A stretch of DNA of 64,000 bases from Laetmonice hystrix (lineage: Eukaryota): contig OZ249449.1 in assembly GCA_965235115.1 (NCBI GenBank), positions 8,804,001 to 8,868,000 on the forward strand. The letters run 5' to 3'. Of this stretch, positions 6,972-39,482 are shown piece by piece. Within the stretch, counting starts at the first letter, position 1; each line of letters starts with the position of its first letter. The notes under the pieces were generated by a model, which searched no databases, was not told where the DNA came from, and saw only the letters and a program-made list of their open reading frames with translations. The position numbers and the translations under genes were made by a program.

Positions 6972-7684
6972 TTAAGTTCGGGTCCATCTAACCTAGTCCT
7001 TTTGGACTTTGTGACTTTATTGTGAAAACGTAGCGTGCACGTTTTTAACTGTCCGCAACTTGTGAAGTTCCAGAAATAGTCGCATCTTGATTCTTGAGGA
7101 GCATGTTTAGAATATTGGAAATCGATTTCCGAAAGTACTAGTTGAACAACTATTATAAATACACAATGTACTGACAGTAACGCTTCTAATTCGCAGAAGT
7201 AATTTTAATATAACCCAGTGAGTCGGAATAGGAAAACGCGTCCTACTTTTGAAATGTATACTTGTAGTGAAAGGCCTAGTGTTAGATGATGCTATACACA
7301 GCACTGGGTTTTTCTTAGCAGGTTTATATTGGTAGAGTTAACCTTGATTTCATGGGGGCCTTCTCATTACCGAGATCTGTATATAGTCTCCTTAACCCGT
7401 CAATCAATGTAATTCTTTTCACCTCTCTGTTGCAAGAAGGTATATTTTAATAATATCAATTAAAGAAAACGTAAGGCACCTCGCGTAATACAACGTAAAA
7501 CGATTCTAAACAGGCGTAGCAAGTTACCAGGGTCGGTGAGTAGGCCTATTTATGATATTTAATCAATTACAGTAGTATTATTGCTAATAGTTAGAGAAAC
7601 TAGACGTAACTATGTCTGCAATTGATCTAGATCTACGCTAGACTGCCAACACTATCACCAGAATGCTTTGAAACCCCGTTTCCT

Positions 7685-9870: not shown

Positions 9871-10966
9871 AATGCTAAAAGAACAATGCAAAAATTGTGC
9901 ATTAAAGACAGAGAGAATACATGTGTAGACACTTATATGGTCGGACGGACGGACGTAGAAACAAATTGGCAGCTCTGCCTCTTGAGTTGGAGCTAATAGT
10001 AGGCCAAATTAATAGGCTATGTAAACAACAACAAACAAACACAGAAAAAAAAGAAACAACTTGCCTGCAGATGTATTAGTGAATCATAGACGAACATCCA
10101 CCCTGTCAACACGCGTAGCCAAACAGGTCTGGGAATCCTAAGGGGACTGACTACATGCGTGCATATATGTGTCAGTACGTCACCCCACAAACCGTCCCGG
10201 AGATAGGTGAATGCATCATTGGATAATACCACGGTACGCCAGCTCTCCAAGCAACCATGAGTAAACACAACGTCAGGGTTATGTTACTCTTGGGGGCATT
10301 GAACATTTGTATGACAAGGTCACAAGCACTGCCGTAGGCCTATATAAACACGTGTTAGGGCCTCATTTATGCGCTTGGAGTATTTCTAGTTTGAGGAAAA
10401 GAGTCAATAGTAAGCAAGAATTAACAAATAAGGGTTTTTTTGCGGGGCCACGGTATGGGGCGATTTGTTGAATGGACACCATCCCTGCATTTTTTCTACA
10501 CGGTGCTCAACTGGAAGCAAACGGAGGGGGTGGCAGTGGCGGATCGGGGGGGGGGGCTTGGGGGGCTTAAGTCTATACCAAACCTTAACGGAGCACTCAT
10601 GGGGACTGCATTGTTGACTATAAGCATATCTCAGTGATGATGGTCAGGCAGGCTCGTTGCTAAAGCCCCAGTCCCACCAAAGCCGATTGTATACAGATCT
10701 GAAATTTATTTTAAGTCGTGATGAATCGTAATGAAAATAACAACCCGAAGACCTAGCTAGCTACGAACCTTAACGTACGGTTTCTGATTGGTCGCAAGAT
10801 CGTCGGTGACTGGTTAAATCTCCTGAGCTAAAATACGAGTTTTGCTGCTGGTTATGCCAGGGCGTAGAATCTATATATAGATCTACGTAAGCACGCAAAG
10901 CACGCAAACGTTACGCTCTGGTCCCAGGATGGCAGGTCGGGGCATCAAGGCCTCTCGGCTCATGTC

Positions 10967-19029: not shown

Positions 19030-22000
19030 ATGGGGAAGTTCCGGAAGGTGAGAGATGTATGTATACGTGTACATATATTGTTTTACAATTTACAACATCT
19101 GTAGGGCCCTCAAATGCGAAAATTACGCCATATATATGAGACCTCAGCTTTATGTGGAAAGAAATTAACGTCATAGTGGTTTCTCATTTACCTGCCCGTT
19201 TCTAAGATATGGCTAGGTCTGAGATATTTACGGGGGATGAAGTTTTACTACCGCAACAGCACCAGTAACAACAACACTCATTTCTATTCCTGGCAGACAA
19301 AGCACTGATGCCATGCTATCTAGTGAGCGCCCTCCACCGTAATATTCGACACTTAGTCGTTTGACCAGCCGAAAAAAAACAGGCAGGCAGGCACGTAGGC
19401 CTATATCACATTTCTGACACATATCTAACAATTGGCTCACAGGAAATGTGGAAAAAATTACCTCAAAGGTGAAACAAAATATTTACTACATATATGAAAA
19501 ATGTGTACATCAAATATTATGAAAACCAAGTTTGTCCATGTAAACACTATCTTGTGGGGATTACCAAAGCTTTGTCAATGGCGGTGCAGTAGTGGTGGTT
19601 TCGGCCATATACTTATGCTATGGAAATGGGTTCAGGAATCATAGGACCGGCTTTAGACTGCACTGAGGTGCCATAGACAATATTAGAGAAGCTTAAACGT
19701 GAACTGGGTTAAGTGTGAAGCCCATATATATATAGGTGGCCTGCATACATCGGCACACAATAGACCGATATACATTGTCAGGGACCCGGATTTATACTTG
19801 AGTACCTTTGTCCGATAACAGCAGTAAGAACCATATACTAATACCACATCTTGTTTACTTTTATTTTATTTCCACAAGGTGTCAAACCGGTCTCTTTTTA
19901 ATCCGTAAAGTACATTTCGTAAATTGATGTAGCCTGGGCCTGGAGGAATCTAGGCCAATATAGACATGTACATTAATAATTATTATATTGCAAATTTATG
20001 TTTTCTTGCAGGACATCAGGCGGTATTTTAACTACACATGGGTCATTTGCGCCGCGTCGTTCTTCGTGAAAACCGTGTCTGGTGGCGTGACGTACTCCAT
20101 GGGGGTGTTTTACATCATCTTCTGTGAAAAACTGGAGGGAAGCAAAGAAATGATAGCCTTCGCCGCATCCATGAATCTGGCTGTTATGTGTTTAACTGGT
20201 GAAGACAATACTTAAAGATGTCCTCTCGGGACTTTAAAAAAATGCATGGTCATTTGAAAAGATACATCTGTAGCCTATTATAGCTGTTGATATCATTGAT
20301 AGTTTCTCGAACTTTTTGATACTTTTTTATTTTATTATCATGGGTATTGTGTGAAACAACCCCCATATAAGTCATTAAATGGACTTTTTCAGAGCTTGAA
20401 CATCTTTAGAGCCCAAGATCCGACTCTGTTGGTTGGGGACTCCATCAGTTCCCACATAGAGTTGTGACAATGTCTATGTTCCCACGATTATCATATATGC
20501 GGGTATAATGCATGATAGTTTGCATGAACGTATCCAGAGGGGCCACCTGTAACTAAATTTTCTGCCCCCCCCGGACCCAATCAACCATATACCTCGTGGC
20601 AATCACACAAATTATACACAAGTAGTTTACATATTCGGAAAGAAGTTATGTTATTCCATTTGCAGGACCAATCTCTGCAGTTCTTGTCGCCAGATGCGGA
20701 GAGAGATGGACCACCATTGCCGGGGCTCTCCTGGGAACAGTGGGCATGGTCTCTGCTTCCTTTTCTACCAACGTGTTTCATCTAGTCTTCACATACGGTA
20801 TCCTCACTGGAGTAGGTCTGGGCCTGACCAGTATTCCGTCCTTGTCAATACAGGCCAAGTACTGCGATAAACGCCTAGAGTTAGCTTCCGGCATAGTGAT
20901 GTCTGGGACTGGATTTGGGTCTTTCCTATTTCCAAGACTCGTAGTTCTCCTTGAGGAACATTTCGGATGGCGTGGAGCGTTGGTGTTACTCGGCGGAGTT
21001 TTCCTCAACGTGACTGTCAGTGGCGCCCTCTACCGGACTGTGCCAAAAGTTTCCACGTCTTGTGATGACCTGTCCAGTCGGAATACAAGCGGGGAAAGAT
21101 ATAGGAACTTCATATCTATGTTCCGCAATGTTCCATTCGTGTGTCTATGTCTTAGCATGACTTTGTTTTGTTTTTTTAACACCATCATGTACACCCATTT
21201 TGGTGCCTACTCTCTGTATCTTGGACACACAAAAGATGGTGTAACAGTTCTTTACCAGATCCTGGGGGTTACCGTCACAGTTGGTAGGATACTGGCAGGC
21301 ACCATTGCTCAAATTCCGTGCGTAAATTCCAGGGTACTTATAATTATGGCTACTCTTTTCCTGGCTCTATGCACTACAGTGGTCCCTGTGTTTACAAGCT
21401 GGGCCGTCTTGGCGGGATTTGCGTTTGTCATGGGGCTACTCCTGGGACCCATCAACGTCGTCATTTATCCTGTTGCCACCACGATGGTCAGACCAGAAGA
21501 TGTGCCGATGGCGTTTGGGCTATTCGCGATTTTCTCAGGGCCTCCTTCAATGTTTGGTGGCGCGGTGGGGGGTAAGAAAGCAAAATAATCATTGCTCCGT
21601 TAAGATAATATCAGATCATAGATAATATTAATATTAAGATAACACATTCATTGTGGCTACTTTATAAGAAGGCGAAGAAAGTGTGTGGCAAATACTGTCA
21701 TACTATGATAAATAATTAGTGGCCAACATGATGGTCAGACCTGAAGATGTCACGATGGCGTTTGGGCTGTTGACGATTTTCGGTGGGCCTGCAATGTTTG
21801 GTGGTGCGGTGGGGGTTAAGAATGCAACAGAATCTTTGTTCTTAGTCCACAACCTTGGACATAATAACACATTTATTGGGGGTACTTTATAGGAAGGAAA
21901 AGAAAGCAAATCAAGTTCATCAAGCAACCCCCCCCCCCACCAAAAAGGGTGTTTTCTTCAATATTATTGATATCATTGCCACTTTCTCTACTTTTTCATG

Positions 22001-22561: not shown

Positions 22562-22960
22562 GTAAAACAACGGACAGAAAATAATCCTTTATCAGGCAAA
22601 ATAGTTTCATCGCTGCTTAATCTAGGCATCAATGTACGCGATGCGCGTTGGCATCTGTTTTTCAATTATCCTGATACAGCTTGGGTTTTACAGAGTAATG
22701 CTGGTCTTCTGCCCTTTCTCAAATGCCTGGAACAGCCCCAACTAATCTTGTTAATACTTGAAATTTATAGTAGGCCCTATTCCCTTCACAATATCTTAAA
22801 ATACATACGTTTGAATAAAAACACCAAACGTAGCGCCGTCTGGACGGATTCCGCTCAGTTATCCCTACAGCCGTGCCCTGGAATGGATCATGCGAGTAGT
22901 CGGTCTCGGGTTGGTCCCAGTAAGGTAAGTAGGTATCTAAATGCAGATTTTCCACCTTAC

Positions 22961-23115
22961 CAGCTCTGAGGAGCCCAAGGGGTAACATTTACATGCCGAC
23001 ACCCGTAACTTCCTGCTGGAGCTTGCGCCCGCCACAGTGAGCGTGTAAACTATCTTGGTGTTGGCGGAATGGCCACGACTGTCATACGGTGTTGCAGTGA
23101 CACGGGACAAATTCA
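22961..23115 (-). pseudogene. Exon-like antisense relic (phase 1 to 0), also at 51582-51736 and 56740-56894
   Basis: Acceptor TATTATAG, donor CTG|GTAAGG, open frame VNLSRVTATPYDSRGHSANTKIVYTLTV...SACKCYPLGSSEL. Family unknown. Confidence 0.4.
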
Positions 23116-23780
23116 CTATAATATTTTCAAAATAAATATGTTCAAAAATATTTGTTCTGCTTAATGAGGGCTTGGATTTGGGTCCCAAATGAAATAGACC
23201 CCCCCCCCCCCGATTTTGAAGTGAAGCAAAATAAGCATGTTGTTATTCATGTCTATTCTCAATAGATCTATGGGCCTATTTTTCCTCTAATTTTTATCTT
23301 GAGGTGCCGGGAGGTAGGTCCCCTCTAGAATTTTTAGTCTTCAAAATGAAACATTTTTTTAAAATAACAGTTAAATGAAGACGGATCAATGAAAATTTGT
23401 CAGGCGCTAGTGTGTTGGCGACATCTTATCAGCATGTTATGTTGTGTCGACGGGTCCCCTGGCCAGTGAAACGTCTTTATTAGCATGGTAGGCTACCACC
23501 ATGGGACACGTCAAGAGTCGACTCAAGATATGTACCGGCGCAATTTATACAGATATGTGCATGGTTAACCTCATTCAGCTGATGTAATAATATTATTATA
23601 TTGTATAAAGAATTCTGTGTCTGTATTGTGGTCATAGATTCATACATGCATTGCAGCAGTCAAAGCGATGCACTACAAAATAGACCCACATAGCCTAACC
23701 ATATTACTTTCATAAAAAGATGGCATTATACTGAATCTACCATCATAATACAGTTTCAGTGGCAGATGCTCAGCCACACA

Positions 23781-24045
23781 CAGTGGCGTATCCAGAAATC
23801 TTTTAAGGGGGGTTTCCGAAGTTTAGGTACTTCAGAGATGGCCATTAGTCCATGGTTCCCTGAGTAATTAAAAAAAGAAGACATCATGCAATCTCGGGAC
23901 ATCGTGTGGAAATATGAAGGTTTCCTTTGGTTAAAATAATGCATTTTACACCCCTTTTTTTTATCTAAATGTCCTTAATATGGTAATTTTTTTAAGGGGG
24001 GGGGGGGTTCCAGGATACTTGGAAACCCCCCTGGATACGCCACTG
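23781..24045. mobile_element. hAT-like MITE with 15-bp perfect TIRs
   Basis: CAGTGGCGTATCCAG...CTGGATACGCCACTG; TSD degenerate. Paralogs at 52411-52680 and 57566-57830. Confidence 0.8.
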
Positions 24046-25114
24046 CGACACATACGGGGCCCGATGGCCCAGAAACCAAGAGGTGTTCCAACCTTAAACC
24101 AAGTGGACCCTAAGCCTAGGTCCATAGACTTCATTTTCGGCTTGGTCCCAGGGTGGGATACATAGGGTTCCGTCTATTCCCGGCCCCAAATACAATGTAT
24201 ATCTTTTCAACGGCCGGCTGTCCGATATGTCACGCTCAGAATTCCCCCTCAAATGTACCCGACATTTCCAACGTTTGTAGACAATTTTAACAGAAAGAGT
24301 CTTTCCCCTCTTGGTTGTAGGCCTATGTCAGTTATTCAACTAGATAATGTCGAGTGGTCGTTGTGATAAGATTCGCTGAGTGTGAGCATTTGTAGCGGCG
24401 AGTCTGTCAATATATCATGATAGTTCGAAAAAATTGGACCTATAGTATACTAATAGGCCTATGGTGACAAGTGCTAGTGTGAGGCCAAAAAAAATTGTGA
24501 GACCAATTTTTTTTTTAATTTTGCAGATAAACAGAGTATGTTCTTTTAAAATTCAGCAAAAAATGATACCTCACTGGGTTAGTTTTTTTTGTTAAGAGCG
24601 TTTGAAATTGTATATGTTCGTCATGTACGTCATGTACACTGTAAACTATTTTTCATTTTTACCACTTCTATTTGTTATAACGGTGACATCCGCTGGATAG
24701 GGGATGGGATAATAAGGGAAAACTGTTTCACTGGCAACCGAGGTAGAGCATGTTTATAGCCCAATCGAGCCGGACGATCATGTATATACTCGGAAAGAGA
24801 GCGGCGGTGTGTCGTACTGGATGTTTACACCGAAAGTCCCAGTTTCGGAGGAAGTGGGCTTTCAGCGCTGGCGGTGCATAGCGGGATTTGAGTGACCTAG
24901 TTTTGAGAAACTCCCGTATTATGACCTCTGAATTTCTCAACTAGATTTCGCAGTTTCGGGATATGTACCTCTTATCAGACATTAGTTCGTAAATGTGGCA
25001 AATTTTTAGAAGTGTTGAGGGAGATTACTACTGACGTTTTTCTCATAAGTCCATCCTGGGTGACGCACGGATCTACATTTGAGATGATATTCTACTTATG
25101 TCCCCATCTGGAAA

Positions 25115-26101
25115 ATGGGACCGTTTCAGAAACTAAGAAATGTATGTATCCGTTCCAATTTTTAAAGAATTCTCAGCGTTTTTATTGATGACCTTTAGCC
25201 TTTTGATGGTGGTGGGGGTCGTATCAAAATCCTACGAATTATGAAAAGTCTTCTTATCTAGAATCCGGTGTAGAATGCTAATTTTTGGGGTAAAAAAATC
25301 CTTCCATTTTGGACACAGGTCCATGGACATGGACATTAATTATACTGCAAATGATTTATGTTTTCTTGCAGGACATCAGGCTGTGTTTTAACTACACATG
25401 GATCATTTGCGCCGCGTCGTTCTTCGTGAAAACCGTGTCTGGTGGCGTGACGTACTCCATGGGGGTGTTTTACATAATCTTCTGTGAAAAACTAGAGGGA
25501 AGCAAAGAAATGATAGCCTTGGCCACATCCATGAATCTCGCTGTTATGTGTTCAACTGGTGAAGAAAATACTTAAAGATGTCCTCTCAGGGACTTTAAAA
25601 AATGCATGGTCATTTGAAAAGATACGTCTATAGCCTATTATAGCTGTTGATATCATTGATAGTTTCTCGAACTTTTTGATACTTTTTTATTGTGTGAAAC
25701 ACCCCCCATATAAGTCATCAAATGGACTTTTCCAGATTTAAACATCTTAAGAGCCCAAGATCCGACTCTGTTGGTTGGGGACTTTATCTGTTCCCACATA
25801 GAGTTGTTACAATGTCTATGTTCCAACGATGCGGGTATAATGTATAGTCTGCATGAACGTATCCAGGGAGGCCCCCTGTAACTAGATTTTCTGCCCCCCC
25901 CCCCGGACCCAATCAACCATATACCTCGTGGCAATCACACAAATTATACAGAAGTAGTTTACATATTCGGAAAGAAGTTATGTTATTCCATTTGCAGGAC
26001 CAATCTCTGCAGTTCTTGTCGCCAGGTGCGGAGAGAGATGGACCACCATTGCCGGGGCTCTCTTGGGAACAGTGGGCATGGTCTTTGCTTCCTTCTCTAC
26101 C
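25115..26101 (+). pseudogene. SLC16 type B copy B3, truncated. Exons 25115-25141, 25372-25558, 25998-26101
   Basis: Breaks at ...GMVFASFST and runs directly into the antisense of a type A exon. Confidence 0.9.
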
Positions 26102-26275
26102 CCAGCAAAGTGAGGGAATCAGCGCCACGACGGTCTGCGAGTCGTGGAAATGTCTGCTGAACATGATGTAGATGATACCCAAAGAGAGCAGTATGCCGGC
26201 GTGCAAGGCGTTGGCTGTAACACTTGCGGCACCAACCACCCAGCTGTAGCCAGAGTCAACCACTGGCTTGGCCAT
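26100..26275 (-). pseudogene. SLC16 type A fragment A' (first coding exon only; donor and exons 2-3 deleted)
   Basis: MAKPVVDSGYSW...IPSLCW (58 codons), then antisense B3. Upstream A-type 5' region is retained to ~26960. Confidence 0.9.
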
Positions 26276-27719
26276 AATGCTGAAAGAACAATGCAACAAT
26301 TTTGCATTAAAGACAGAGAGAATACATGTGTATATATAGACACTTATATGGTCAGACGGACAGACGTATTGGCAGCTCTGCCTCTTGAGTTGGAGCTAAT
26401 AGTAATAGGCTATGTAAACAACAACAAACAAACACAGAAAAGGAAAAAGAAACAACTTGCCTGCAGATGTATTAGTGAATCCTAGACGAACATCCACCCT
26501 GTCAACACGCGTAGCCAAACAGGTCTGGGAATCCTAAGGGGACTGACTACATGCGTGCATATATATGTCAGTACGTCACCCCAAAACCCTCCAGCAACCA
26601 TGAGTAAACACAATGTCAGGGTTATGTTACTCTTGAGGCAATTGAACATGTTTATGACAAGGTCACAAGCACTGCCCTAGGCCTATATAAACACATGCGC
26701 TTGGAGTATTTCTAGTTTGAGGAACAGAGCCAATAGTAAGCAAGAATTAACAAATAAGGGCTTTTTTCGCGGGGCCATGGGACGGGGCGATTTGTTGAAT
26801 GCACACCATCCCCGCATTTTTTCTACACGGTGCTCAACTGGAAGCAAACTGAGGGGGTGGCAGTGGCGGATTGGGGGGGGGGGGGGTGGCTTGGGGGACT
26901 TAAGTCTATACCAAAAATCAACGGAGCACTCATGGGGACTGCATTGTTGACTATAAGCATATAAGGTGTCTAAAATTTATAATTTCCCCAAGAAGTATAC
27001 CTTTCGATTGATTGTTACATGGTAAAAAAAATTGTTTCAGACCTGGGATTCATAGTAAAACTAAAGTCAATTTACAGAAGAAAAAATGCTTTGGTCGGTA
27101 CCTTTTTCCTGAAGAAATTCATTTTTGCAAAGCCCATCAGAAACGTTTTGCTAAGGGCCACACGAATTATGTTTCTAAATTTCAAACACAGATAACCTGA
27201 AGCATTAAATTACAAAGCATGATAGCAATAGAATGGAGAATAGGCCTAATAATTGAGATCATACATTCCAGCACCCAAAATTATCTCGGACGTCACGGAA
27301 AAAAAGGCACCTATACTTTGAACTGCTACAGAAACTACACCGTTAGGATGATATCAGTATAATGACATTTCTCAGAAACCTCATTACCTATAGAATACGT
27401 TTAGGCCAAAAATACATTAATATTCATGTTTTTCAATTTTGACCTTCTTTTTCGCCAAATGTACATTTCTGGGCGATATGACTACTTGCACTATGTGGCG
27501 TCGGTCTCTGTATACGGTAGTACAGAGACGGATACTCTGTCTACAGTGGTCCCAGAACTTCTCACGGTAGAATTCAAATCCCCCATGGTGCTTATTTGAG
27601 AAACGTGTGCTAGATTTGTGAGAGGTCCGTGGTTTCAGTGATGTACTTCAAGTTCCTCAACTGGAAAACTCACCACTTTGATTTAACCCTGGCTGTTCAC
27701 AGCTGAGTCGTAAACTTAA

Positions 27720-28045
27720 AGTGCCAACCTAAATTCCTGAAATATTTACCTCTGAACTCCAGTGACACCATATTAAAATGTCAAGTTCGAGCAATAAGCA
27801 AAAGTATTATAAAAATAGAGTTATGTTAAGGGCCCAGAGTTACTGTTCGGTCCGACCTCTATTGTCTAAAGCCGCTGGGAGCTAGCGGCAATGATGCGTG
27901 GTAACGACAGCAGAGACAATTTTGTTTTCATTTTTCGATTCCATTTTTAAAAATACTTTTGCTTATTGCTCGGACCTGAAATTTTAATGTGTCACTGGGG
28001 TCAAAGGTAATAATAATAAGTCTTTGGGGAATTTGGGGTGCCACA
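27720..28045. mobile_element. TTAA-flanked MITE, paralog of 6645-6971
   Basis: TTAA at 27716-19 and 28046-49; same TIRs. Confidence 0.75.
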
Positions 28046-28758
28046 TTAAGTTCGGGTCCATCTAACCTAATCCGTTTGGACTTTGTGACTTTATTGTGAA
28101 AATGTAGCGTGTACTTTTTTAACTGTCCGCAACTTGTGAAGTTCCAGAAATAGTCGAATCTTGATTCTTGAGGGGCATGTTTAGAATATTGGAAACCTAT
28201 TTCCGCCAGTACTAGTTGAACAACTATTATAAATACACAATGTACTGACAGTAACGCTTCTAATTCGCAGAAGTAATTTTAATATAACCCAGTGAGTCGG
28301 AATAGGAAAACGCGTCCTACTTTTGAAATGTATACTTGTAGTGAAAGGCCTAGTGTTAGATGATGCTATACACAGCACTGGGTTTTTCTTAGCAGGTTTA
28401 TATTGGTAGAGTTATCCTTGATTTCATGGGGGCCTTCTCATTACCGAGATCTGTATATAGTCTCCTCAACCCGTCAATCAATGTAGTTCTTTTCACCTCT
28501 CTGTTGCAAGAAGGTATATTTTAATAATATCAATTAAAGAAAACGTAAGGCACCTCGCGTAATACAACGTAAATCGATTCTAAACAGGCGTAGCAAGTTA
28601 CCAGGGTCGGTGAGTAGGCCTATTTATGATATTTAATCAATTACAGTAGTATTATTGCTAATAGTTGGAGAAACGAGACGTAACTATGTCTGCAATTGAT
28701 CTAGATCTACGCTAGACTGCCAACACTACCACCAGAATGCCTTGAAACCCCGTTTCCT

Positions 28759-30973
28759 TTATATATTCTCATTTTGTCCAACTTTTCTTTCCTGGAGCGT
28801 TTTTGCTGGACGTGCTCCGCGGAGCTGGCTGCAGACGGTATGAATGAGAACGAGGCCTGATGTCACCATCAGACCTCCCGCCAAGTGAAACGACATCCCA
28901 TAATTCCCGGTTGATCGATACAGGATTTCTGTGGGTGTATAAGGAACAAGTCATTCAAAGTTGTTTCAAGTGGTGATTTAAGATAATTTTATCTATAATA
29001 TTATATAGACGGTGAAAATTATGTTCAATTGTTTAATGGGTAGGCCCTATGGTACCTAGAGCGGCCAACCACCATTTTTTTACCATCTTCCCTCAAAGAG
29101 GTTCAGCATGCACTGCACGCAACGTTGTGTTACATTGTCATGAATCGTGATGAATAAGGCAATTTCCTACCGCTCGATTAAGCGACCAGTATTTATAGAA
29201 CATGTATTGCAAATGTATCGTACAAACCTACCTGAGAGGACTAGTGACCCACATAAATATAGGCCTATATGAGAAACTTTTGAGTTGAGCCAATTGCCCA
29301 CAGACTGTGGTTCCTTATGGATTATTTTTGTGATACCTTTACGTAAAAAACTTGATTTCTTGCATTCTTGTGGATCACAAGAAATTGCGATGGGTCACAA
29401 GACATCTTACGATAAGTCTTACGGAGTTTAAAACCATGAGAAAAAGCTGCAAGAACACCGCAAGGAGACCACAACGATAGGGTCCAACTGCTTACGCCAC
29501 AACACACGGCAATCACTCCGCAAAGGGAACTGCAAAGAACCACAATCTATTGGCATGCAATTAGCTTGACTCTACTCAAGAAGGAGGAACTCATACCACC
29601 AAGCGGCCCACCAAGGATGGTTCCAGGGCCGGCAGATAGACACAGAGTCCCAAAGGCGGTCGGGACGGAATCTAGGTCAACCACCTGGGTCGTGTTGTGA
29701 AGCCAGTTCGAATGCATGGGCGCTGACAGTATGCCGTAAACAACAGCAAACGCGACCAGACCACGTAAGGACGACACAAACACTGGAAAGACAACCGTCA
29801 AGACACCAAGCAGAGTATTTACTGACAAGGAAATAATTAAGGGATTCATTCGGGGTATTTGTAGCAAAAAGCCTGACAGAAATCTGGCAATTGTTGACGA
29901 GATTCCAAGGATGAAATATAGAAACGCAGCATCCTCTTCGGTGTATCCCAAACTTAATGCGTACCATCCCAAATGTAAATATATCACACTTGTCGCCATT
30001 GAATATATTCCTGTGCTCAGACACAGCGATAGAAGTGCTTGATTTCGTAACAGAGTGAAATACTTCAGGCATTGTCGGAAAATTCCACCTGACGTTTCTC
30101 TTGCTGAATTCTTGCTTCCTACTTCCATTTCTTTATTTGGCCTGTAGATGGCGCCACAAACCACACAATTCAGTAGGAGGCCGGCCATCATTAAAATGGC
30201 CCCCCGCCAACCGTAAACCTCATCTAAACGTTGGATCACGACAGGAAAAGTCATTGAGGCTACTCCGATCCCACCACTGGCAAGTCCAACGACGAAACCG
30301 AGTCGTTTGTCGAAATATTTTGTCAGGATGGACATGGCTGGTACGTATATGGAGCTCAGCCCGATTCCTAGCAGTATTCCATAGGTAAAAAGGACTTGGC
30401 CAGAGCTAGTTGCAAATGACGTCATAACCAAACTGGCAGAAGACAGTGTCGCCCCAAATATTGAGACTCTTCGTTCACCATATCGCTCTACGAAAATACC
30501 ACACAGAGGTCCTGAAAAAAGCAACGCAAAAGGTCTGAACCCCACTGAGAAAGACTTAAGTCTGGATGTGCAAGTATACATGTAGGCCTATATATTTGAG
30601 CCTCGCAGATGTAGTCTGACCTTCCATTATTTCATCTCATTTCATTATTGAAACTTATTATGAAGCAAAAGGGATTCAGAAAATCCTTCTTTCCAAGTTT
30701 TCATTGTATCCGAATGCTTAATGCATTACATAAATTCTGAGATTTAATTATAACATCATATGGTGTATTCGATGTATTACCCCCAAAAAAGTACATCCCC
30801 CAGCAAAGTGACGGAATCAGCGCCACGACGGTCTGCGAGTCGTGGAAATGTCTGTTGAACATGATGTAGATGATACCCAAAGAGAGCAGTATGCCGGCGT
30901 GCAAGGCGTTGGCTGTAACACTGGCGGCACCAACCACCCAGCTGTAGCCAGAGTCAACCACTGGCTTGGCCAT
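28759..30973 (-). CDS. SLC16 type A, copy A2 (425 aa). Exons 30973-30781, 30511-29597, 28928-28759
   Basis: Same exon sizes as A1 (193/915/170), canonical sites, open frame. Confidence 0.9.
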
Positions 30974-32597
30974 AATGCTGAAAGAACAATGCAACAATTT
31001 TGCATTAAAGACAGAGAGAATACATGTGTAGACACTTATATGGTCGGACGGACGAACGTATTGGCAGCTCTGCCTCTTGAGTTGGAGCTAATAGTAATAG
31101 GCTATGTAAACAACAACAACAGAAAAAGAAAAAGAAAAAGAAACAACTTGCCTGCAGATGTATTAGTGAATCCTAGACGAACATCCACCCTGTCAACACG
31201 CGTAGCCAAACTGGAAATCCTAAGGGGACTGACTACATGCGTGCATATATATGTCAGTACGTCACCCCAAAACCCTCCAGGAGATAGGTGAATGCATCAT
31301 TGGATACCACGGTACGCCAGCTCTCTAAGCAACCATGAGTAAACACAACGTCAGGGTTATGTTACTCTTGGGGCCATTGAACATTTGTATGACAAGGTCA
31401 CAAGCACTGCTGAAGGCCTATATAAACACATGCGCTTGGAGTATTTCTAGTTTGAGGAAAAGAGTCAATAGTAAGCAAGAATTAACAAATAAGGTTTTTT
31501 TTTCGCTGGGCCACGGGACGGGGCGATTTGTTGAATGGACACCATCCCTGCATTTTTTCTACACGGTGCTCAACTGGAAGCAAACTGAGGGGGTAGCAGT
31601 GGCGGATCGGGAGGGGGAGGGGGCTTGAGGGGCTTGAGGGGCTAAATCTATACCAAACCTCAACGGAGCACTCATGGGGACTGCATTGTTCACTATAAGC
31701 ATATCACAATGATGATGGTCAGGCAGGCTCATTGCTAAAGCCCCAGTCCCACCAACGCCGATTGTATATGCCGTTCTGTCAAGATCTGAAATTTATGTTA
31801 AGTCGTGATGAATCGTAATGAAACAATAACAACCGGAAGACCTAGCTAGTAAGGCTCAGTCAGTGAGGCTTACGACCACTCAATGTTAAAAATTGGTGTG
31901 TCACTGGCAACGCAAATTCATGTACCGATCAACTCACCGGCATCCATTTATCACGGGCCACGTCTTCTTTTAGTGGTTCGACAAGTATTTTAAGGATAAA
32001 ACATCAAATTTCGAAGTGCCGTACAGCTGCGGCTTCTGTTGCCTGTTTATGTCCCAGCATGCATCTCTCTGACCTAACAAGGTCCCCTGCTCTACGTATG
32101 TCGTAACATAGCGGACGCGTCTGTTAGGCAGGGTACAAGGCTACTCCCTGACTCGGGAGGTCAAAATAGCCGCGATAGGCAGAGAGCGAAATTCGTCGAT
32201 TCCAGACTTTGTGCTGCCCTTATTATGTCTCGTCGTGCTTTCCAAACTTGGAAATAAGTGAGATAAGTTACTTTAAGCGTGTTTATTATTATTCAGTTCA
32301 GATATATGGGCAGGGGAGGGGTTTTCATAGTGGTTAGATGATTTGACCGAACACACCAGGAACTTGCACTATGTGGCGTCCGTCTCTGTATACGGTAGTA
32401 CAGAGACGGATACTCTGTCTACAGTGGTCCCAGAACTTCTCACGGTAGAATTCAAATCCCCCATGGTGACTATTTGAGAAACGTGTGCTAGATTTGTTAG
32501 AGGTCGGTGGTTTCAGTGATGTACTTTAAGTTCCTCAACTGGAAAACTCACCATTTTGATTTAACCCTGGCTGTTCACAGCTGAGTCGTAAACTTTA

Positions 32598-32913
32598 AGT
32601 GCCAACCTAAATTCCTGAACCTAAACTCCAGTGACACCATATTAAAATGTCAAGTTCGAGCAATAAGCAAAAGTATTATAAAAATAGAGTTATGTTAAGG
32701 GCCCAGAGTTACTGTTCGGTCCGACCTCTATTTTCTGAAGCCGCTGGGAGCTAGCGGCAATGATGCGTGGTAACGACAGCAGAGACAATTTTGTTTTCAT
32801 TTTTCCATTCCATTTTAAAAATACTTTTGCTTATTGCTCGAACCTGAAATTTCAATGTGTCACTGGGGTCAAAGGTAATAATAATAAGTCTTTGGGGAAT
32901 TTGGGGTGAAACA
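32598..32913. mobile_element. TTAA-type MITE, third paralog with decayed ends
   Basis: Same internal sequence as 6645-6971. Confidence 0.7.
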
Positions 32914-33695
32914 TTAAGTTCGGGTCCATCTAACCTAATCCGTTTGGACTTTGTGACTTTATTGTGAAAACGTAGCGTGCACTTTTTTAACTGTCCAAAA
33001 TAGTCGAATCTTGATTCTTGAGGAGCATGTTTAGAATATTGGAAACCTATTTCCGCCAGTACTAATTGAACAACTATTATAAATACACAATGTACTGACA
33101 GTAACGCTTCTAATTCGCAGAAGTAATTTTAATATAACCCAGTGAGTCGGAATAGGAAAACGCGTCCTACTTTTGAAATGTGGAATCAGAGTCATATAGG
33201 CCCTTGAGCCATACAAACTACCCATCAAACTAACATGGAAAGTTAGTAGACTAAAGATTATATCCGAGAAACGCCTACTTGTCGTGAAAGGCCTAGTGTT
33301 AGATGATGCTATACACAGGGGTTTTTCTTAGCAGGTTTATATTGGTAGAGTTATCCTTGATTTCATGGGGGCCTTCTCATTACTGAGATCTGTATAGTCT
33401 CCTCAACCCGTCAATCAATGTAGTTCTTTTCACCTCTCTGTTGCAAGAAGGTATATTTTAATAATATCAATTAAAGAAAACGTAAGGCACCTCACCTAAT
33501 ATAACGTAAAACGATTCTAAACAGACGTAGCAAGTTACCAGGGTCGGTGAGTAGGCCTATTTATGATATTTAATCAATTACAGTAGTATTATTGCTAATA
33601 GTTAGAGAAACGAGACGTAACTATGTCTGCAATTGATCTAGATCTACGCTAGACTGCCAACACTACCACCAGAATGCCTTGAAACCCCGTTTCCT

Positions 33696-36007
33696 TTATA
33701 TATTCTCAATTTGTCCAACTTTTCTTTCCTGGACCGTTGTTGCTGGACGTGCTCCGCGGAGCTGGCTGCAGACGGTATGAATGAGAACGAGGCCTGATGT
33801 CACCACCAGACCTCCCGCCAAGTGAAACGACATCCCATAATTCCCAGTTGATCGATACAGGATTTCTGTGGGTGTAAAGAGTGAGTGAGAGTGAGTAGTG
33901 GTGGTTTTCCGCCGTGCCGGCATCCGGGGCCATCTTCACGGCGAAAACTGGGTTAAAAGACCATGAAATGAGTGGGTGTAAAGAACAAGTCATTCAAAGT
34001 TGTTTCAAGTTGTGATTTAAGATAATTTTATCTATAGACGGCGAAAATTCTGTTTAATTGTTTGATGGGTAGACCCTATGGTACCTAGAGCGGCCAACCA
34101 CCAGTTTTGTTTTACCATCTTCCCTCAAAGAGGTTCAGCATGCACTGCACGCGACGTTGCGTTACATTGTCATGAATCGTGATAAATGAGGCAATTTCCT
34201 ACCGCTCAATTAAGCGACCAGTATTTATAGAACATGTATTGCAAATCAATCGTACAAACCTACCTGAGAGGACTAGTGACCCACATAAATATAGGCCTAT
34301 ATGAGAAACTTTTGAGTTGAGCCAATTGCCCACAGACTGTGGTTCCTTATGGATTATTTTTGTGATACCTTTACGTAAAAAACTTGATTTCTTGCATTCT
34401 TGTGGATCACAAGAAATTGCGATGGATCACAAGACATCTTCCGATAAGTCTTACGGAGTTTAAAACCATGAGAAAAAGCTGCAAGAACACCGCAAGGAGA
34501 CCACAACGATAGGGTCCAACTGCTTACGCCACAACACACGGCAATCACTCCGCAAAGGGAACTGGAAAGAACCACAATCTATTGGCATGCAATTGGCTTG
34601 ACTCTACTCAAGAAGGAGGAACTCATACCACCAAGCGGCCCACCAAGGATGGTTCCAGGGCCGGCAGATAGACACAGAGTGCCAAAGGCGGTCGGGACGG
34701 AATCTAGGTCAACCACCTGGGTCGTGTTGTGAAGCCAGTTTGAATGCATGGGCGCTGACAGTATGCCGTAAACAACAGCAAACGCGACCAGACCACGTAA
34801 GGACAACACAAACACTGGAAAGACAACCGTCAAGACACCAAGCAGAGTATTTACTGACAAGGAAATAATTAAGGGATTCATTCGGGGTATTTGTAGCAAA
34901 AAGCCTGACAGAAATCTGGCAATTGTTGACGAGATTCCAAGGATGAAATATAGAAACGCAGCATCCTCTTCGGTGTACCCCAAACTTAAAGCGTACCATC
35001 CCAAATGTAAATATATCACACTTGTCGCCATTGAATATATTCCTGTGCTCAGACACAGCGATAGAAGTGCTTGATTTCGTAACAGAGTGAAATACTTGAG
35101 GCATTGTTGGAAAATTCCACCTGACGTTTCTCTTGCTGCCTTCTTGTTTCCTACTTCCATATCTTTATTTGGCCTGTAGATGGCGCCACAAACCACACAA
35201 TTCAGTAGGAGGCCGGCCATCATTAAAATGGCCCCCCGCCAACCGTACACCTCATCTAAACGTTGGATCACGACAGGAAAAGTCATTGAGGCTACTCCGA
35301 CCCCACCACTGGCAAGTCCAACGACGAAACCGAGTCGTTTGTCGAAATATTTTGTCAGGATGGACATGGCTGGTACGTATAGGGAGCTCAGCCCGATTCC
35401 TAGCAGTATTCCATAGGTAAAAAGGACTTGGCCAGAGCTAGTTGCAAATGACGTCATAACCAAACTGGCAGAAGACAGTGTCGCCCCAAATATTGAGACT
35501 CTTCGTTCACCATATCGCTCTACGAAAATACCACACAGAGGTCCTGAAAAAAAAGCAACGCAAAAGGTCTGAACCCCACTGAGAAAGACTTAAGTCTGCA
35601 TGTGCAAGTATACATGTAGGCCTATATATTTGAGCCTCGCAGATGTAGTCTGACCTTCCATTATTTCATTTCATTTCATTATTGAAACTTATTATGAAGC
35701 AAAAGGGATTCAGAAAATCCTTCTTTCCAAGTTTTCATTGTATCCGAATGCTTAATGCATTACACAATTTCTGAGATATAATTAAAACATCATGTGGTGT
35801 ATTCGATGTATTTCCCCCAAAAAAGTTCATCCCCCAGCAAAGTGACGGAATCAGCGCCACGACGGTCTGCGAGTCGTGGAAATGTCTGCTGAACATGATG
35901 TAGATGATACCCATGGAGAGAAGTATTGCGGCGTGTAAGGCGTTGGCTGTAACACTGGCGGCACCAACCACCCAGCTGTAGCCAGAGTCAACCACTGGCT
36001 TGGCCAT
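33696..36007 (-). pseudogene. SLC16 type A copy A3, probable splice-defective. Exons 36007-35815, 35543-34629, 33865-33696
   Basis: Exons are open, but the first coding-intron donor is G|GAAATA (35814-13) where A1, A2 and A4 have G|GTAATA. Confidence 0.7.
33881..33971 (-). mobile_element. 91-bp 5'-truncated retroposon (SINE/LINE 3' end) with 13-bp TSD
   Basis: TSD GTGGGTGTAAAGA at 33868-80 and 33972-84. Minus-strand 3' tail CACTACTCACTCTCACTCAC. Absent from A1, A2 and A4. Confidence 0.85.
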
Positions 36008-36095
36008 AATGCTAAAAGAACAATGCAAAAATTGTGCATTAAAGACAGAGAGAATACATGTGTAGACACTTATATGGTCGGACGGACGGACGTAG

Positions 36096-37721
36096 TGTAG
36101 CGGGATTTCCCTGACCTGAGACATTAAATTCGGGTCATGGAGCACCGACTAGCTGTAACGGGCTTTAGGGGCGAGTGGGCCATAATAGAAGTATTCGGGT
36201 TACTCTTATGATAGGCACCGACTTTACAAGGGGAGAGGGAATAAATAATAGGCGTGCCGTTTAACTCTTAAACAGAGTTCCTGTTTTACAGGGGCTTATA
36301 GGGCGTACTTCTCGTTGTGTTCAAATTAGTACTTCATTATGCGTGGGGAGGACAACGGGTAGGAACGGATTACTGGATGGCGTTAACACTATTCTGGGAA
36401 ATCGAGAACTCTCAGACCGTCAGTTTAAATTAAGAAAATACTTTGGCTTTAATGCAGTAGTAACATATACATGGCCTAGCATCCACCGCTAGGAACATCG
36501 TTCTCCAACTATTTATACCGTCACGATTATACCTACACCGGCCTGCTACTGGACGCCGACTTAGCATCCTCCGCAAACATTGAGGCTCGCTCGGCCTGAC
36601 CCACTTTCACTATTACTGGCTTAACGCATACGTATAGCCTACGCACATCATTACATACAACCCGGTGGTTGTACCACGCACTTAAACCTAATCCAACCTA
36701 AAACCTCACCCTAGCCGAGAAGGCGGGCAACTAGGGCGTAACTCTACTAAACTAAATAAACCTTGTCAATCTTCACATCATAAAACGGCTATTTAAACCT
36801 GCGTGAATGACCCACACACAAAACAATCGTAACACAGCATTGCATTTCTGACTGAGCACGTAAATAAAACCCGCAAAATAAAAGTAGCATCTTGGGAGGC
36901 TGACGGAACGTGATCATACCTGGTTTGTTTGATCAGGGGGTAGGAAGGGAAAGGTGGCGGCAACTGGAGGGTGGTCACGCCGGCGCGTGCGAGAAGCACG
37001 GTCAACGGCGGTGTCTGAGGGTGGCTGAAGGTTGCTGAGGCTGGTAACGATGCAGGCTCTAAGTAGGTGAGGTTTCCCTTACGAGCGGCAAACTCGCTCC
37101 GTATTTATAGGCCGGGGTCCTGGAGGGGCAGATGAGGGGAGGGCGGTCAGTATCCAATGGGAGGGCTCCATCTCAGATGGACTGAGAAAAGGATGAATCA
37201 AGGGGGGGGGGCGAGGACGGATGTGGTAATGGTCTAAAAATAGATGGACTGGGCCAGGAGGGATGGACGGAAGTGGGTATCTGCCTACAGCAGTGAAGGG
37301 TTCCTGACTTCTGATTAGAGGATAAAATAAATGCGCTTCACTCGCATTCTGCCTTAAGAAATATACCATATACTAAAAGGAGTTCCCCTAAAATAAAGTA
37401 ACATACTGATAACTACACCATGAGAAAATAAGGTTCTAGGGAAGGAACAAATAAGTCACCGGCCTGTCAGGCCGCTGTGCGGACCGAGACTAAACAAAAT
37501 GGCTCCCGATTGCTGTTGTGGATCACTCTTACAATGACATATACCTGATACTATAACAATACAACTGCTTAACAAGGCAAATCACGGTATGTTACCAATA
37601 AACGATGGACACAGGATGACACACCAAATCCTGTGAACCTAGGTCAACACATTATTAAATAACGAGCAAGAGACTACACTGTGGGCACATTATCGCTCAC
37701 ACCATGAGTTAAACCGCTTCA
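36096..37721 (-). mobile_element. 1626-bp solo LTR (Gypsy-like 4-bp TSD) in the A3 5'-UTR intron
   Basis: TG...CA ends with inverted TGTAGCGG / CCGCTTCA. TSD GTAG/CTAG; empty site GTAG at 9955-58. Minus-strand TATAAATA at 37109-02, CCAAT at 37154-58, GC box at 37141. No internal coding region. Confidence 0.8.
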
Positions 37722-38748
37722 CTAGAAACAAATTGGCAGCTCTGCCTCTTGAGTTGGAGCTAATAGTAGGCCAAATTATGTAAACAACAACAAACAAACA
37801 CAGAAAAAGAAAAAGAAACAACTTGCCTGCAGATGTATTAGTGAATCCTAGACGAACATCCACCCTGTCAACACGTGTAGCCAAACAGGTCTGGGAATCC
37901 TAAGGGGACTGACTACATCCGTGCATATATGTGTGTCAGTACGTCACCCCACAAACCCTCCAGGAGATAGGTGAATGCATCATTAGATAATACCACGGTA
38001 CCCCAGCTCTCTAAGCAACCATGAGTAAACACAACGTCAGGGTTATGTTACTCTTGGGGCCATTGAACATTTGTATGACAAGGTCACAAGCACTGCCGTA
38101 GGCCTATATAAACACGTGTTAGGGCCTCATTTATGCGCTTGGAGTATTTCTAATTTGAGGAAAAGAGCCAATAGTAAGCAAGAATTAACAAATAAGGGTT
38201 TTTTTTCGCTGGGCCACGGGACGGGGCGATTTGTTGAATGGACACCACCCCTGCATTTTTTCTACACGGTGCTCAACTGGAAGCAAACTGAGGGAGTGGC
38301 GGATCGGGAGGGGGGGGGGGAGGGGGGCTTGAGGGGCTTAAGTCTATACCAAACCTTAACGGAGCACTCATGGGGACTGGATTGTTGACTATAAGCATAT
38401 GTCAGTGATGATGGTCAGGCAGGCTCATTGCTAAAGCCCCAGTCCCACCAAAGCCGATTGTATACTATGTTCTATGCCGTTCTGTCAAGATCTGAAATTT
38501 ATTTTAAGTCGTGTTGAATCGTAATGAAAATAACAACCCGAAGACCTAGCTACGAATCTTAACGTACGGTTTCTGATTGGTCGCAAGATCGTCGGTGACT
38601 GGTTAAATCTCCTGAGCTAAAATACGAGTTTTGCTGCTGGTTATGCCAGGGCGTATGTATAGATCTACGTAAGCACGCAAAGCACGCAAACGTTATGCAC
38701 TGGTCTCAGGATGGCAGGTCGGGGCATCAAGGCCTCTCGGCTCATGTC

Positions 38749-38865: not shown

Positions 38866-39482
38866 ACAGGTGTGCCATGAAATATTGCAGTCATGAAATA
38901 TAGCTATAGGCTATGAAATATTGCAGTCTATGGAATATTGCAGCATTTCATGACTGCAATATTTCATAGGCGGCATTATTCCATAGCTATAGCTATGAAA
39001 TATTGCAGTCCGTAGAATATTGAAGCATCTCATGACTGCAATATTTCATAGCTATAGCTATGGAATAATGCCGCCTATGAAATATTGCAGTCTTGAAAAA
39101 GCCTAGTAGGCTACTGCAATATTCCACGGACTGCAATATTTCATAGCTATAGCTATGGAATAATGCCGCCTATGAAATATTGCAGTCTTGAAAAAGCCTA
39201 GTAGGCTACTGCAATATTCCACGGACTGCCATAGGCCTATTTCATAGCTACAGGCTATGACATATTGCTGCCTATGAAATAATGCAGTGATGCAATACTG
39301 CAATATTTCATAGGCAGTAATATTTCATAGCCTGTACCTATGAAATATTGCAGGCTATGAAATATTGCAGCATTGCGTCACTGCAATATTTCACAGGCAG
39401 CAATATTTCATAGCTACAGGCTATGAAATATTGCAGTGACGCAATGCTGCAATATTTCATAGGCAACAATATTTCATAGTAC
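38866..39482. repeat. ~620-bp nested palindromic satellite, present only in copy 2
   Basis: ATGAAATATTGCAGT / ACTGCAATATTTCAT units with TAGCTATAGCTA symmetry centres. Empty site at ~11083. Confidence 0.9.

What the first reader, a model, noticed from the sequence alone, without database searches (positions are those of the whole stretch)
25115..26960. Tail-to-tail fusion of two convergent transporter genes: a possible two-way antisense locus for the whole cluster
Seen: a deletion joins B3 (+) and A' (-) at 26100-01 through a 2-bp CC microhomology. Both 5' regions are retained, while both 3' ends, and the A' splice donor, are gone. Inference: the B3 transcript would run into antisense type A exon 1, and the A' transcript into antisense B3 exons. 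One locus could then make antisense or dsRNA nearly identical to all nine other paralogs of both subfamilies, acting as an endo-siRNA source or a dosage brake on the expanded array.
Basis: partly seen in the sequence, partly recalled or inferred. Interest (0 to 1): 0.7.

Follow-up and report, generated by a model that had tools for sequence, protein, structure and literature searches.

The report
Two truncated transporter gene stubs fused
Two neighbouring membrane-transporter genes in a repeated gene cluster each lost their back end and were joined tail to tail, leaving two dead stubs; this is ordinary gene-cluster decay, and nothing shows that the stubs regulate their intact relatives.

Summary
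Homology to all five other B-type copies stops at 26101. Homology to all four other A-type copies starts at 26100. The overlap is CC.

Both parents are SLC16/monocarboxylate-transporter-like MFS genes, about 36% identical to each other. B3 keeps exons 1-2 and 104 nt of exon 3, and its frame stops four codons past the joint (109 aa). A' keeps 178 nt of its first coding exon and about 680 bp upstream, but has lost its donor.

The cluster holds 11 copies. Six look intact, three carry point lesions (A3, B1', B2') and two are these stubs, so this is birth-and-death decay.

A simple deletion is the easiest history. A duplication edge is not excluded. Two bases of microhomology are expected by chance about 16% of the time.

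The antisense or endo-siRNA reading is unsupported:
- Complementarity to the paralogs exists in the DNA.
- The only public runs are contigs from one sample, and no listed contig bridges the joint.
- One depth-2 contig, from a run that looks like RNA, matches A'-specific sequence.
- The genome shows one Dicer, one AGO, two PIWI and no RdRP. That is the configuration of Capitella teleta, an annelid in which no endo-siRNA pathway was found.

Interest is low.

The parts
22823..25114 (+). B3 upstream region, colinear with the region upstream of B3' (51444-53765)
   Evidence: Self-BLAST gives 22823-26101 = 51444-54749 at 97.1%. Substitution-only divergence is 1.65%.
25115..25141 (+). B3 exon 1 (ATG plus 8 codons, GT donor)
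   Evidence: The ATG, the 27-nt ORF and the GTA donor are conserved in B1, B1' and B3'. There is one B3-private change, Q for P at 25128.
25372..25558 (+). B3 exon 2 (187 nt, AG acceptor, GT donor)
   Evidence: It is 95% identical in protein to B3'. An X4 contig begins exactly at 25372.
25998..26101 (+). B3 exon 3 remnant: the first 104 of 903 nt
   Evidence: Homology to all five other B copies ends at 26101.
26100..26101 (.). Junction microhomology CC
   Evidence: Alignments. There are no filler bases.
26111..26113 (+). TGA that ends the B3 frame four codons after the joint (109-aa product, ...FSTPAK*)
26102..26279 (-). A' first coding exon remnant. The ATG is at 26275-26273. 178 of 197 exon nt are kept (174 of the 193 coding nt counted from the ATG), and the donor is lost.
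   Evidence: 58 of 59 residues identical to A2. The frame then runs on through antisense B3 to 25916, giving 120 aa.
26280..26962 (-). A' acceptor (26282-26280) and the conserved upstream region shared with A1-A3. It carries a private deletion of about 55 bp at 26592/26593 and a private 6-nt TATATA insertion at about 26333.
   Evidence: Alignment. Divergence from A1-A3 is 5.0-6.4%. An X4 contig at 26291-26439 has 0 mismatches at depth 2.
26306..26311 (+). First poly(A) hexamer (ATTAAA) that a B3 read-through would meet
   Evidence: This is a consensus match only.
25686..25691 (-). First AATAAA that an A' read-through would meet. It lies inside antisense B3 intron 2, before exon 2.
   Evidence: This is a consensus match only.

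Best explanation
The locus is a rearrangement scar. A non-homologous end-joining event, most simply a deletion of at least about 6.6 kb, removed the last 799 nt of exon 3, exon 4 and the 3' flank of a B-type gene. It also removed the whole body of the convergent A-type gene downstream.

The parents are SLC16/monocarboxylate-transporter-like MFS genes in an 11-copy cluster that grew by block and tandem duplication. Neither stub can make a transporter. B3 encodes 109 aa, roughly the first quarter of the MFS fold. A' encodes 58 genuine residues followed by 62 nonsense codons, and it has no splice donor.

The stubs are most likely inert pseudogene fragments. Any RNA they make would be a by-product of promoters that have not yet decayed.

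Shown: the breakpoints, the microhomology, the retained and lost parts, the truncated frames, and lesions in three sister copies. Inferred: that the event was a deletion rather than a duplication edge, that the junction is present in the animal, and that it has no function.
For: - Breakpoints and the CC overlap.
- Gene family: MFS_1 at E 8e-25 and 2e-33. The best named relatives are MCT12/13 at 25-28% identity. The atlas neighbours are MCT8/13. A and B are 36% identical with shared intron phases.
- Truncated frames.
- Cluster layout and block colinearity, 5896-26101 with 31849-54749.
- Birth-and-death context: B2' has +1 and -1 frameshifts giving 4 stops. The B1' exon 3 acceptor is AG>AA and the A3 donor is GT>GA. 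A3 also has a 1.6-kb insertion upstream.
- A' has no near-identical sibling (best 5% divergence), whereas B3 has one at 1.65%. That pattern fits loss of an older A copy's body better than a junction made by the same duplication that produced B3.
- No structured RNA and no hairpin.
- One Dicer, one AGO, two PIWI and no RdRP.
- There is no homology between the two sides that could mislead an overlap assembler, and there are no N runs in the window.
Against: - No listed read contig bridges the joint.
- At 16 of 17 checkable sites the short-read contigs carry the B3' letter, not the B3 letter. The B3 copy is therefore either at lower dosage (perhaps heterozygous), was dropped by bubble-popping, or, less likely, is not in that sample.
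- Both stubs keep open frames and near-parental sequence, so recent or continuing use cannot be ruled out from sequence alone.
- One A'-specific contig in the RNA-like run X4 (26291-26439, depth 2) hints at low-level transcription there.
- Absence of function cannot be shown without strand-specific RNA and small-RNA data.
Confidence: 0.72

Rival explanations
1. The junction was made directly by a tandem duplication or template switch (right breakpoint in B3 exon 3, left breakpoint in the A exon), not by a later deletion. The extra A copies in the left block were then collapsed by unequal crossing-over. The functional consequence is the same: two dead stubs.
For: Both sides keep reference orientation, as a tandem-duplication junction would. 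Block 5896-26101 is colinear with 31849-54749, and homology ends exactly at the joint. B3 to B3' divergence (1.65%) is in the range of the block duplication (2.1-2.5%). This history needs two events, the same number as duplication plus deletion.
Against: A' has no sibling of block age. Its nearest relatives are 5.0-6.4% away. The left block holds one A gene, not three. A1's 3' part shows no older lineage in a sliding-window comparison.
Confidence: 0.2
2. One reading: both retained promoters fire and the chimeric sense-antisense RNAs pair with each other or with paralog mRNAs. They would act as trans-antisense regulators or as small-RNA precursors that damp both subfamilies. In this animal any small RNAs would more plausibly be piRNAs than siRNAs.
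For: Complementarity is real. 56-105 of 160 21-mers of the A' exon, 52-125 of 167 of B3 exon 2 and 18-46 of 84 of the exon 3 remnant are perfect in each paralog of the matching type. There is no poly(A) hexamer between the joint and the end of the antisense A exon. The B3 upstream region is 98% like that of intact B3'. One A'-specific contig appears in the RNA-like run X4. Pseudogene antisense regulators exist in a mollusc (PMC3537157) and pseudogene trans-NATs in human (PMC2984423).
Against: No transcript across the joint and no B3-specific RNA contig was seen. The X4 piece is at depth 2, of unknown strand, and lies in putative intron or upstream DNA. An AATAAA stops the A' read-through before B3 exon 2. 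A' has a private deletion of about 55 bp in its conserved upstream region. There is one Dicer, one AGO and no RdRP, and no endo-siRNA pathway was found in C. teleta, which has this configuration (PMC8915122, PMC11114477). Three sister copies are simply decaying. There is no conservation evidence.
Confidence: 0.05
3. Assembly artefact: the B3 copy and the A' stub were joined by a chimeric read or a mis-resolved repeat, and the joint does not exist in the animal.
For: The region is a nest of 92-98% identical duplications. No listed contig bridges the joint, and B3-private alleles are missing from the contigs of X1-X3. The junction-spanning ORF is not on record in any other assembly.
Against: The two sides share no homology that could create a false overlap (36% protein identity, opposite strands), so the joint must be present in reads. 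There is no gap in the window. B3 differs from B3' at 95 aligned columns (substitutions and indel positions) over 3.3 kb, which an assembler does not invent. A'-specific sequence is present in the sample (X4 26291-26439 with 0 mismatches; X3 26364-26594 with 1 mismatch). Logan contigs drop minority paths, so absence there is weak evidence.
Confidence: 0.1

Closest known systems
Truncated duplicate-gene relics in tandem arrays (birth-and-death evolution of multigene families; end-joining deletion scars)
   Same: There is an abrupt two-sided loss of homology at one point, 2 bp of microhomology and no filler. Essential gene parts are lost. Sister copies carry frameshift and splice-site lesions.
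   Different: Two different subfamilies in convergent orientation are truncated by a single junction, so each stub faces the antisense of the other. That is a geometric curiosity rather than a new kind.
Antisense RNA from a NOS pseudogene in the snail Lymnaea (antiNOS; PMC3537157), and pseudogene-derived trans-NATs in human (PMC2984423)
   Same: A rearranged gene copy whose transcript would contain a stretch antisense to functional paralogs.
   Different: In those cases the antisense transcript is demonstrated and, in Lymnaea, regulated. Here no such transcript is shown. The antisense stretch would arise only by read-through across a deletion joint, not by an internal inversion.
Pseudogene-derived endo-siRNAs (mouse oocytes: Tam et al. 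2008 and Watanabe et al. 2008, from my own knowledge; rice: PMC2708354)
   Same: A pseudogene complementary to its parent genes could form dsRNA.
   Different: The genome shows one Dicer, one AGO, two PIWI and no RdRP. C. teleta, which has this configuration, shows no endo-siRNA pathway (PMC8915122, PMC11114477). No small-RNA data exist for this locus.
Drosophila Su(Ste)/Stellate (from my own knowledge): a repeat derived from a paralog gives antisense piRNAs that silence a tandem gene array
   Same: A defective paralog with antisense potential sits beside an expanded array. PIWI genes are present here.
   Different: Su(Ste) is a multicopy, bidirectionally transcribed cluster with proven piRNAs and a phenotype. 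This is a single 1.8-kb locus with no expression evidence.
Convergent cis-NAT gene pairs
   Same: Two promoters face each other.
   Different: Neither unit has its own 3' end or an intact gene. The overlap would be with paralogs in trans, not with the partner's own mRNA.

Membership tests
SLC16 / monocarboxylate-transporter-like MFS genes (the parent genes) | MFS_1 domain across the large exon | tested here: met
   PF07690 at E 7.7e-25 (B3' exon 3) and 2.2e-33 (A2 exon 2), covering profile positions 50-345 of 347.
SLC16 / monocarboxylate-transporter-like MFS genes (the parent genes) | Closest named relatives are monocarboxylate transporters | tested here: met
   MCT12-B-like and MCT13 at 25-28% identity, E 2e-19 to 6e-16. 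The atlas neighbours are MCT8 and MCT13. The relationship is distant, so no orthology to a particular SLC16 member is claimed.
SLC16 / monocarboxylate-transporter-like MFS genes (the parent genes) | Full-length open frame of about 12 TM helices in the two fused copies | tested here: not met
   B3 stops after 109 aa. A' keeps 58 genuine residues. The intact copies are 425-435 aa.
End-joining rearrangement scar | Homology to paralogs ends on both sides at one point, with 0-4 bp overlap and no long repeat | tested here: met
   The overlap is CC at 26100-26101.
End-joining rearrangement scar | The junction is physically present in reads of the organism | tested here: inconclusive
   Only contigs of one sample were available. 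No bridging piece is listed, and B3-private alleles are absent from the contigs.
Pseudogene-derived antisense or endo-siRNA regulator | Complementarity of 100 nt or more to functional paralog mRNAs | tested here: met
   The 178-nt A exon and the 187+104-nt B exons have maximum perfect runs of 31-91 nt in the paralogs of the matching type.
Pseudogene-derived antisense or endo-siRNA regulator | A transcript that contains the antisense stretch | tested here: inconclusive
   The RNA-like run X4 shows no contig over the joint or over B3-private sites. One depth-2 contig lies at 26291-26439, strand unknown.
Pseudogene-derived antisense or endo-siRNA regulator | siRNA machinery: a second Dicer, an siRNA-class AGO or an RdRP | tested here: not met
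   There is one Dicer_dimer locus, one locus with ArgoL1+ArgoMid+Piwi, two further Piwi-only loci and no RdRP. The counts are lower bounds. Mammals make some endo-siRNAs with one Dicer, so this lowers the idea but does not exclude it.
Pseudogene-derived antisense or endo-siRNA regulator | Small RNAs from the locus, and an effect on its targets | not testable with these tools
   No small-RNA run was offered.
Convergent cis-NAT pair | Two complete transcription units whose own 3' ends overlap | tested here: not met
   Both 3' ends are deleted.

The most novel reading that the evidence does not exclude
Both stubs are still transcribed. The chimeric RNAs (B3 exons plus antisense A exon, and A' exon plus antisense B3 exon 3) would feed the PIWI pathway or act as long trans-antisense RNAs. 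A single deletion scar would then damp both subfamilies of an expanded transporter cluster. That would be a regulator born in one step from a rearrangement, in an animal without a classical siRNA pathway.
Probability: 0.04. Interest if true: 0.6.

Novelty: new member of a known kind. Interest (0 to 1): 0.15.

Why it matters
As it stands this is a clean example of how a tandem gene cluster sheds copies. One end-joining event disabled two genes of two subfamilies at once, beside three sisters that are decaying by point lesions. It is useful for annotation: B3 and A' should be flagged as pseudogene fragments, and A3, B1' and B2' as probable pseudogenes. It is also a marker for a structural variant that may be polymorphic. 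It would matter more only if strand-specific RNA and small-RNA data showed that the scar makes antisense RNA that acts on the paralogs. That would show a regulator created in a single step by a deletion.

Tried and rejected
1. Read support. The look-up of sequencing runs gave four runs of one sample and one study, all kept as contigs. Read laying listed no piece bridging 26100/26101. The contigs over B3 are the B3' copy, with 16 of 17 differences equal to B3' letters. The contigs over 26615-26855 carry A2-type letters. Depth ratios could not separate a heterozygous from a homozygous joint.

2. A look-up of the junction-spanning ORF (120-aa and 128-aa versions) in public assemblies found nothing on record. 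That is uninformative, because the window's own genome may be left out.

3. I tried to decide between deletion and duplication edge from divergence. A' is 5.0-6.4% from A1-A3, while B3 is 1.65% from B3', which leans towards deletion. A sliding-window comparison of A1, A2 and A3 is mosaic, at 1-6%, and decides nothing.

4. Rfam scan of 24000-28000 at E up to 0.1: no family. Inverted-repeat search of 24900-27200: one 18-nt pair only. So there is no built-in hairpin.

5. Taxon. I could not verify that. The protein hits are only distant vertebrate MCTs, the atlas gives no near taxon, and a words search of earlier notes was blank.

6. I rejected the idea that the 109-aa B3 product is a functional micro-protein. 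There is no evidence for it, and it is simply the N-terminal quarter of the MFS fold.

7. The bacterial promoter/terminator scan was not used, because it does not apply to an animal genome.
Full report
**What is there**

The window is animal DNA with GT/AG introns and no N runs. It lies at C19:8.80-8.87 Mb of a 627-Mb, 35-contig assembly. It holds a cluster of 11 related genes of two types.

- Both types have their large exons matching Pfam MFS_1, at E 7.7e-25 and 2.2e-33.
- Their best named relatives are monocarboxylate transporters 12 and 13, at 25-28% identity. The language-model atlas gives MCT8/MCT13 clusters as nearest neighbours.
- Types A and B are 36% identical in protein and share intron phases. 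They are old paralogous subfamilies of SLC16-like MFS transporters.

Layout:

| Copy | Strand | Coordinates |
|---|---|---|
| A1 | - | 5896-10760 |
| B1 | + | 14.4-16.9 kb |
| B2 | + | 20.0-22.6 kb |
| B3 stub | + | 25115-26101 |
| A' stub | - | 26102-26962 |
| A2 | - | 27484-31849 |
| A3 | - | 31849-38552 |
| B1' | + | 42.5-45.0 kb |
| B2' | + | 48.8-51.1 kb |
| B3' | + | 53766-56283 |
| A4 | + | 60751-62697 |

Block 5896-26101 is colinear with 31849-54749.

**The observation**

A self-BLAST of 25101-27000 shows that all five other B copies match up to 26101 and no further. All four other A copies match from 26100 onward. The alignments give the joint to the base. Intact B genes read TCTACC then AACG. 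Intact A genes read CCCCCAGC on the + strand. The fusion reads TCTACCCCAGC. So CC at 26100-26101 can belong to either side, and there are no filler bases. The joint occurs once in the genome.

B3 keeps three parts:
- Exon 1 (25115-25141). Its ATG, 27-nt frame and donor are conserved in B1, B1' and B3'.
- Exon 2 (25372-25558).
- 104 of the 903 nt of exon 3.

A' keeps 178 nt of its first coding exon (26279-26102, ATG at 26275). It has lost the last 17 nt and the GT donor.

Two refinements apply:
- The A exon is preceded by an acceptor (tttcag|), and a contig of run X4 stops there. A genes therefore have an upstream non-coding exon, and 'exon 1' is really the first coding exon.
- Two bases of microhomology are expected at about 16% of random blunt joins (my calculation). 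They fit end joining but prove nothing by themselves.

**Consequences for the two genes**

- The B3 frame runs ...FST, then PAK, then TGA at 26111-26113. That gives 109 aa, about the first quarter of the MFS fold, because exon 3 starts at profile position 50 of 347.
- The A' frame keeps 58 genuine residues (58 of 59 aligned positions identical to A2). It then reads 62 codons of antisense B3 to a stop at 25915-25913.
- Neither stub can make a transporter.

**Context: a decaying cluster**

Three of the nine other copies carry lesions.
- B2' has a +1 (CC to CCC, at 49812) and a -1 (loss of a G, at 49980) in exon 3. That leaves 56 shifted codons and four stops.
- The B1' exon 3 acceptor is CAA instead of CAG.
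- The A3 donor after the first coding exon is GA instead of GT. A3 also has a 1.6-kb insertion just upstream.
- A1, A2, A4, B1, B2 and B3' have open frames and canonical splice sites at the junctions I could place.

This is a birth-and-death family. The fused stubs fit it as its most drastic casualties.

**How the joint arose**

Both sides keep reference orientation. The joint could therefore be a deletion between a complete B3 and a complete convergent A'. It could equally be the R|L junction of a tandem duplication or template switch.

- Substitution-only divergences are 1.65% for B3 against B3'. They are 2.1-2.5% for the B1 part of the blocks, 3.3-3.6% among the A1, A2 and A3 bodies, and 5.0-6.4% for the A' upstream region against A1-A3.
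- A' therefore has no sibling of the age of the block duplication. That favours loss of the body of an older A copy, which is a deletion.
- The duplication-edge history needs a second event that collapsed three A genes to one in the left block. It predicts an older lineage in A1's 3' part, and the sliding-window comparison does not show one. Gene conversion could hide it, however.
- I put deletion at roughly three to one over a duplication edge. The functional outcome is the same either way.
- If it was a deletion, the intact copies indicate a loss of at least about 3.3 kb of B3 plus about 3.3 kb of A'.

**Is it an assembly artefact?**

Only four public runs hold the stretch. All are from one sample and one study, and all are kept as de Bruijn contigs.

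- Laid on 23600-28600, no listed piece bridges the joint.
- Over B3 the contigs are the B3' copy. 16 of 17 listed differences equal the B3' letter, and X3 record 21 runs through 26101 into intact exon 3.
- Over 26615-26855 the contig carries A2-type letters (compare).
- A'-private sequence is present. X4 record 31 (26291-26439) has no mismatch and includes the private TATATA insertion. X3 record 22 (26364-26594) has one mismatch.
- Wherever the fusion locus competes with a paralog path, the contig follows the paralog. That is what bubble-popping does to the less covered path. It would fit a joint carried on one haplotype, but the depths do not settle this.

Against an artefact:
- The two sides share no homology that could produce a false overlap.
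- There is no gap in the window.
- B3 differs from B3' at 95 aligned columns (substitutions and indel positions).

I rate an artefact at about 10%.

**The antisense idea**

The premise is geometrically sound.
- A B3 read-through would copy the whole 178-nt antisense A exon before the first poly(A) hexamer (ATTAAA at 26306).
- An A' read-through would copy antisense exon 3 (104 nt) and then meet AATAAA at 25691-25686, before exon 2.
- Perfect 21-mers shared with each paralog of the matching type number 56-105 of 160 for the A' exon. They number 52-125 of 167 for B3 exon 2 and 18-46 of 84 for the exon 3 remnant.

Nothing shows that these RNAs exist.
- Run X4 behaves like an RNA library. Its pieces end at exon edges (25372 and 26281), and its repeat-to-unique depth ratio is about a hundredfold lower than in X1-X3. 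This is my inference, because the run type is not on record.
- X4 has no contig with B3-private letters or across the joint.
- Its single A'-specific piece has depth 2, unknown strand, and lies in putative intron or upstream DNA.
- There is no Rfam family and no hairpin.
- A' carries a private deletion of about 55 bp in the upstream region that A1-A3 conserve.

The machinery also argues against the idea.
- The genome shows one Dicer-dimerisation locus and no eukaryotic RdRP.
- It shows three Piwi-domain loci. Only one of them carries ArgoL1 and ArgoMid. That makes one AGO and two PIWI.
- These counts are lower bounds.
- This is the configuration described for the polychaete Capitella teleta and said to be shared by other annelids and molluscs. 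In C. teleta no endo-siRNA pathway and no processive siRNAs from dsRNA were found, while piRNAs are abundant (PMC8915122). A phylogenomic survey likewise infers loss of DICER2 and siRNA-class AGO in Annelida and Mollusca (PMC11114477).
I could not verify the taxon, but the factor count is a direct test on this genome.
- If the locus made small RNAs they would more likely be piRNAs. A long trans-antisense role like the Lymnaea NOS pseudogene (PMC3537157) also remains conceivable.

I put any regulatory role at about 5%.

**Comparison with what is known**

The locus works like, and is, a truncated-duplicate relic at an end-joining junction. It resembles pseudogene antisense regulators only in having complementary sequence. 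The defining features of that class were either not seen (a transcript), not testable (small RNAs, effect on targets), or tested and not met (siRNA machinery). It is not a cis-NAT pair, because neither unit has a 3' end.

**Verdict**

The structural reading is sound, with the deletion probable. The functional reading is unsupported and disfavoured. This is an ordinary instance of a known kind, and its interest is low.

Noticed in passing
window 49475-50377 (B2' exon 3; indels at 49812 and 49980): There is a +1 insertion (CC to CCC) and, 168 nt later, a -1 deletion (a G lost inside a T run). Together they shift 56 codons and create four stops. B2' is a probable pseudogene, unless these are homopolymer errors of the assembly.
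   Followed up: partly
window 43283-43284 (B1' exon 3 acceptor): The acceptor is AA instead of AG. All other B copies have ...gcag|GACC. The frame is otherwise open, so this is a probable splice-dead copy.
   Followed up: partly
window 35813-35814 (- strand, A3 donor) and 36098-37731: The A3 donor after the first coding exon is GA instead of GT. A 1.6-kb insertion separates its ATG exon from the conserved upstream region.
   Followed up: partly
window 21483-21917 (B2): A tandem duplication of about 200 bp repeats the end of exon 3 and its donor (21724-21815 repeats exon 3 positions 812-903 at 91%).
   Followed up: no
window 26237-26281 and 25372-25440: Contigs of run X4 end at exon edges. A genes therefore have an upstream non-coding exon spliced to the acceptor at 26282-26280, and both subfamilies appear to be expressed in that sample. 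The position of the 5' exon is unknown.
   Followed up: partly
window 24035 versus 52665-52670: B3' carries a 6-bp TAGGCC insertion that B3 lacks. This is the site of another first-stage note on this window (s1-349269).
   Followed up: no
window 38873-39483: A segment of about 600 bp with long imperfect inverted repeats (MITE-like) is present in block 2 and absent from block 1.
   Followed up: no
window 23767-24100, 24435-24935, 27441-27607: These are very high-copy repeats. Their contig depths are 100-700 times those of the single-copy flanks in X1-X3. They flank the fused locus but are not at the joint.
   Followed up: no
G000 C3:12.16 Mb; C20:22.57-22.58 Mb; C18:20.32 Mb; C1:10.05 Mb: RNAi factors found in the genome: one Dicer locus, one AGO-clade locus, two PIWI-clade loci, and no RdRP.
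   Followed up: partly
window 1935-2348: A short tandem repeat array shows up as self-matches at offsets of 63 and 107 bp.
   Followed up: no
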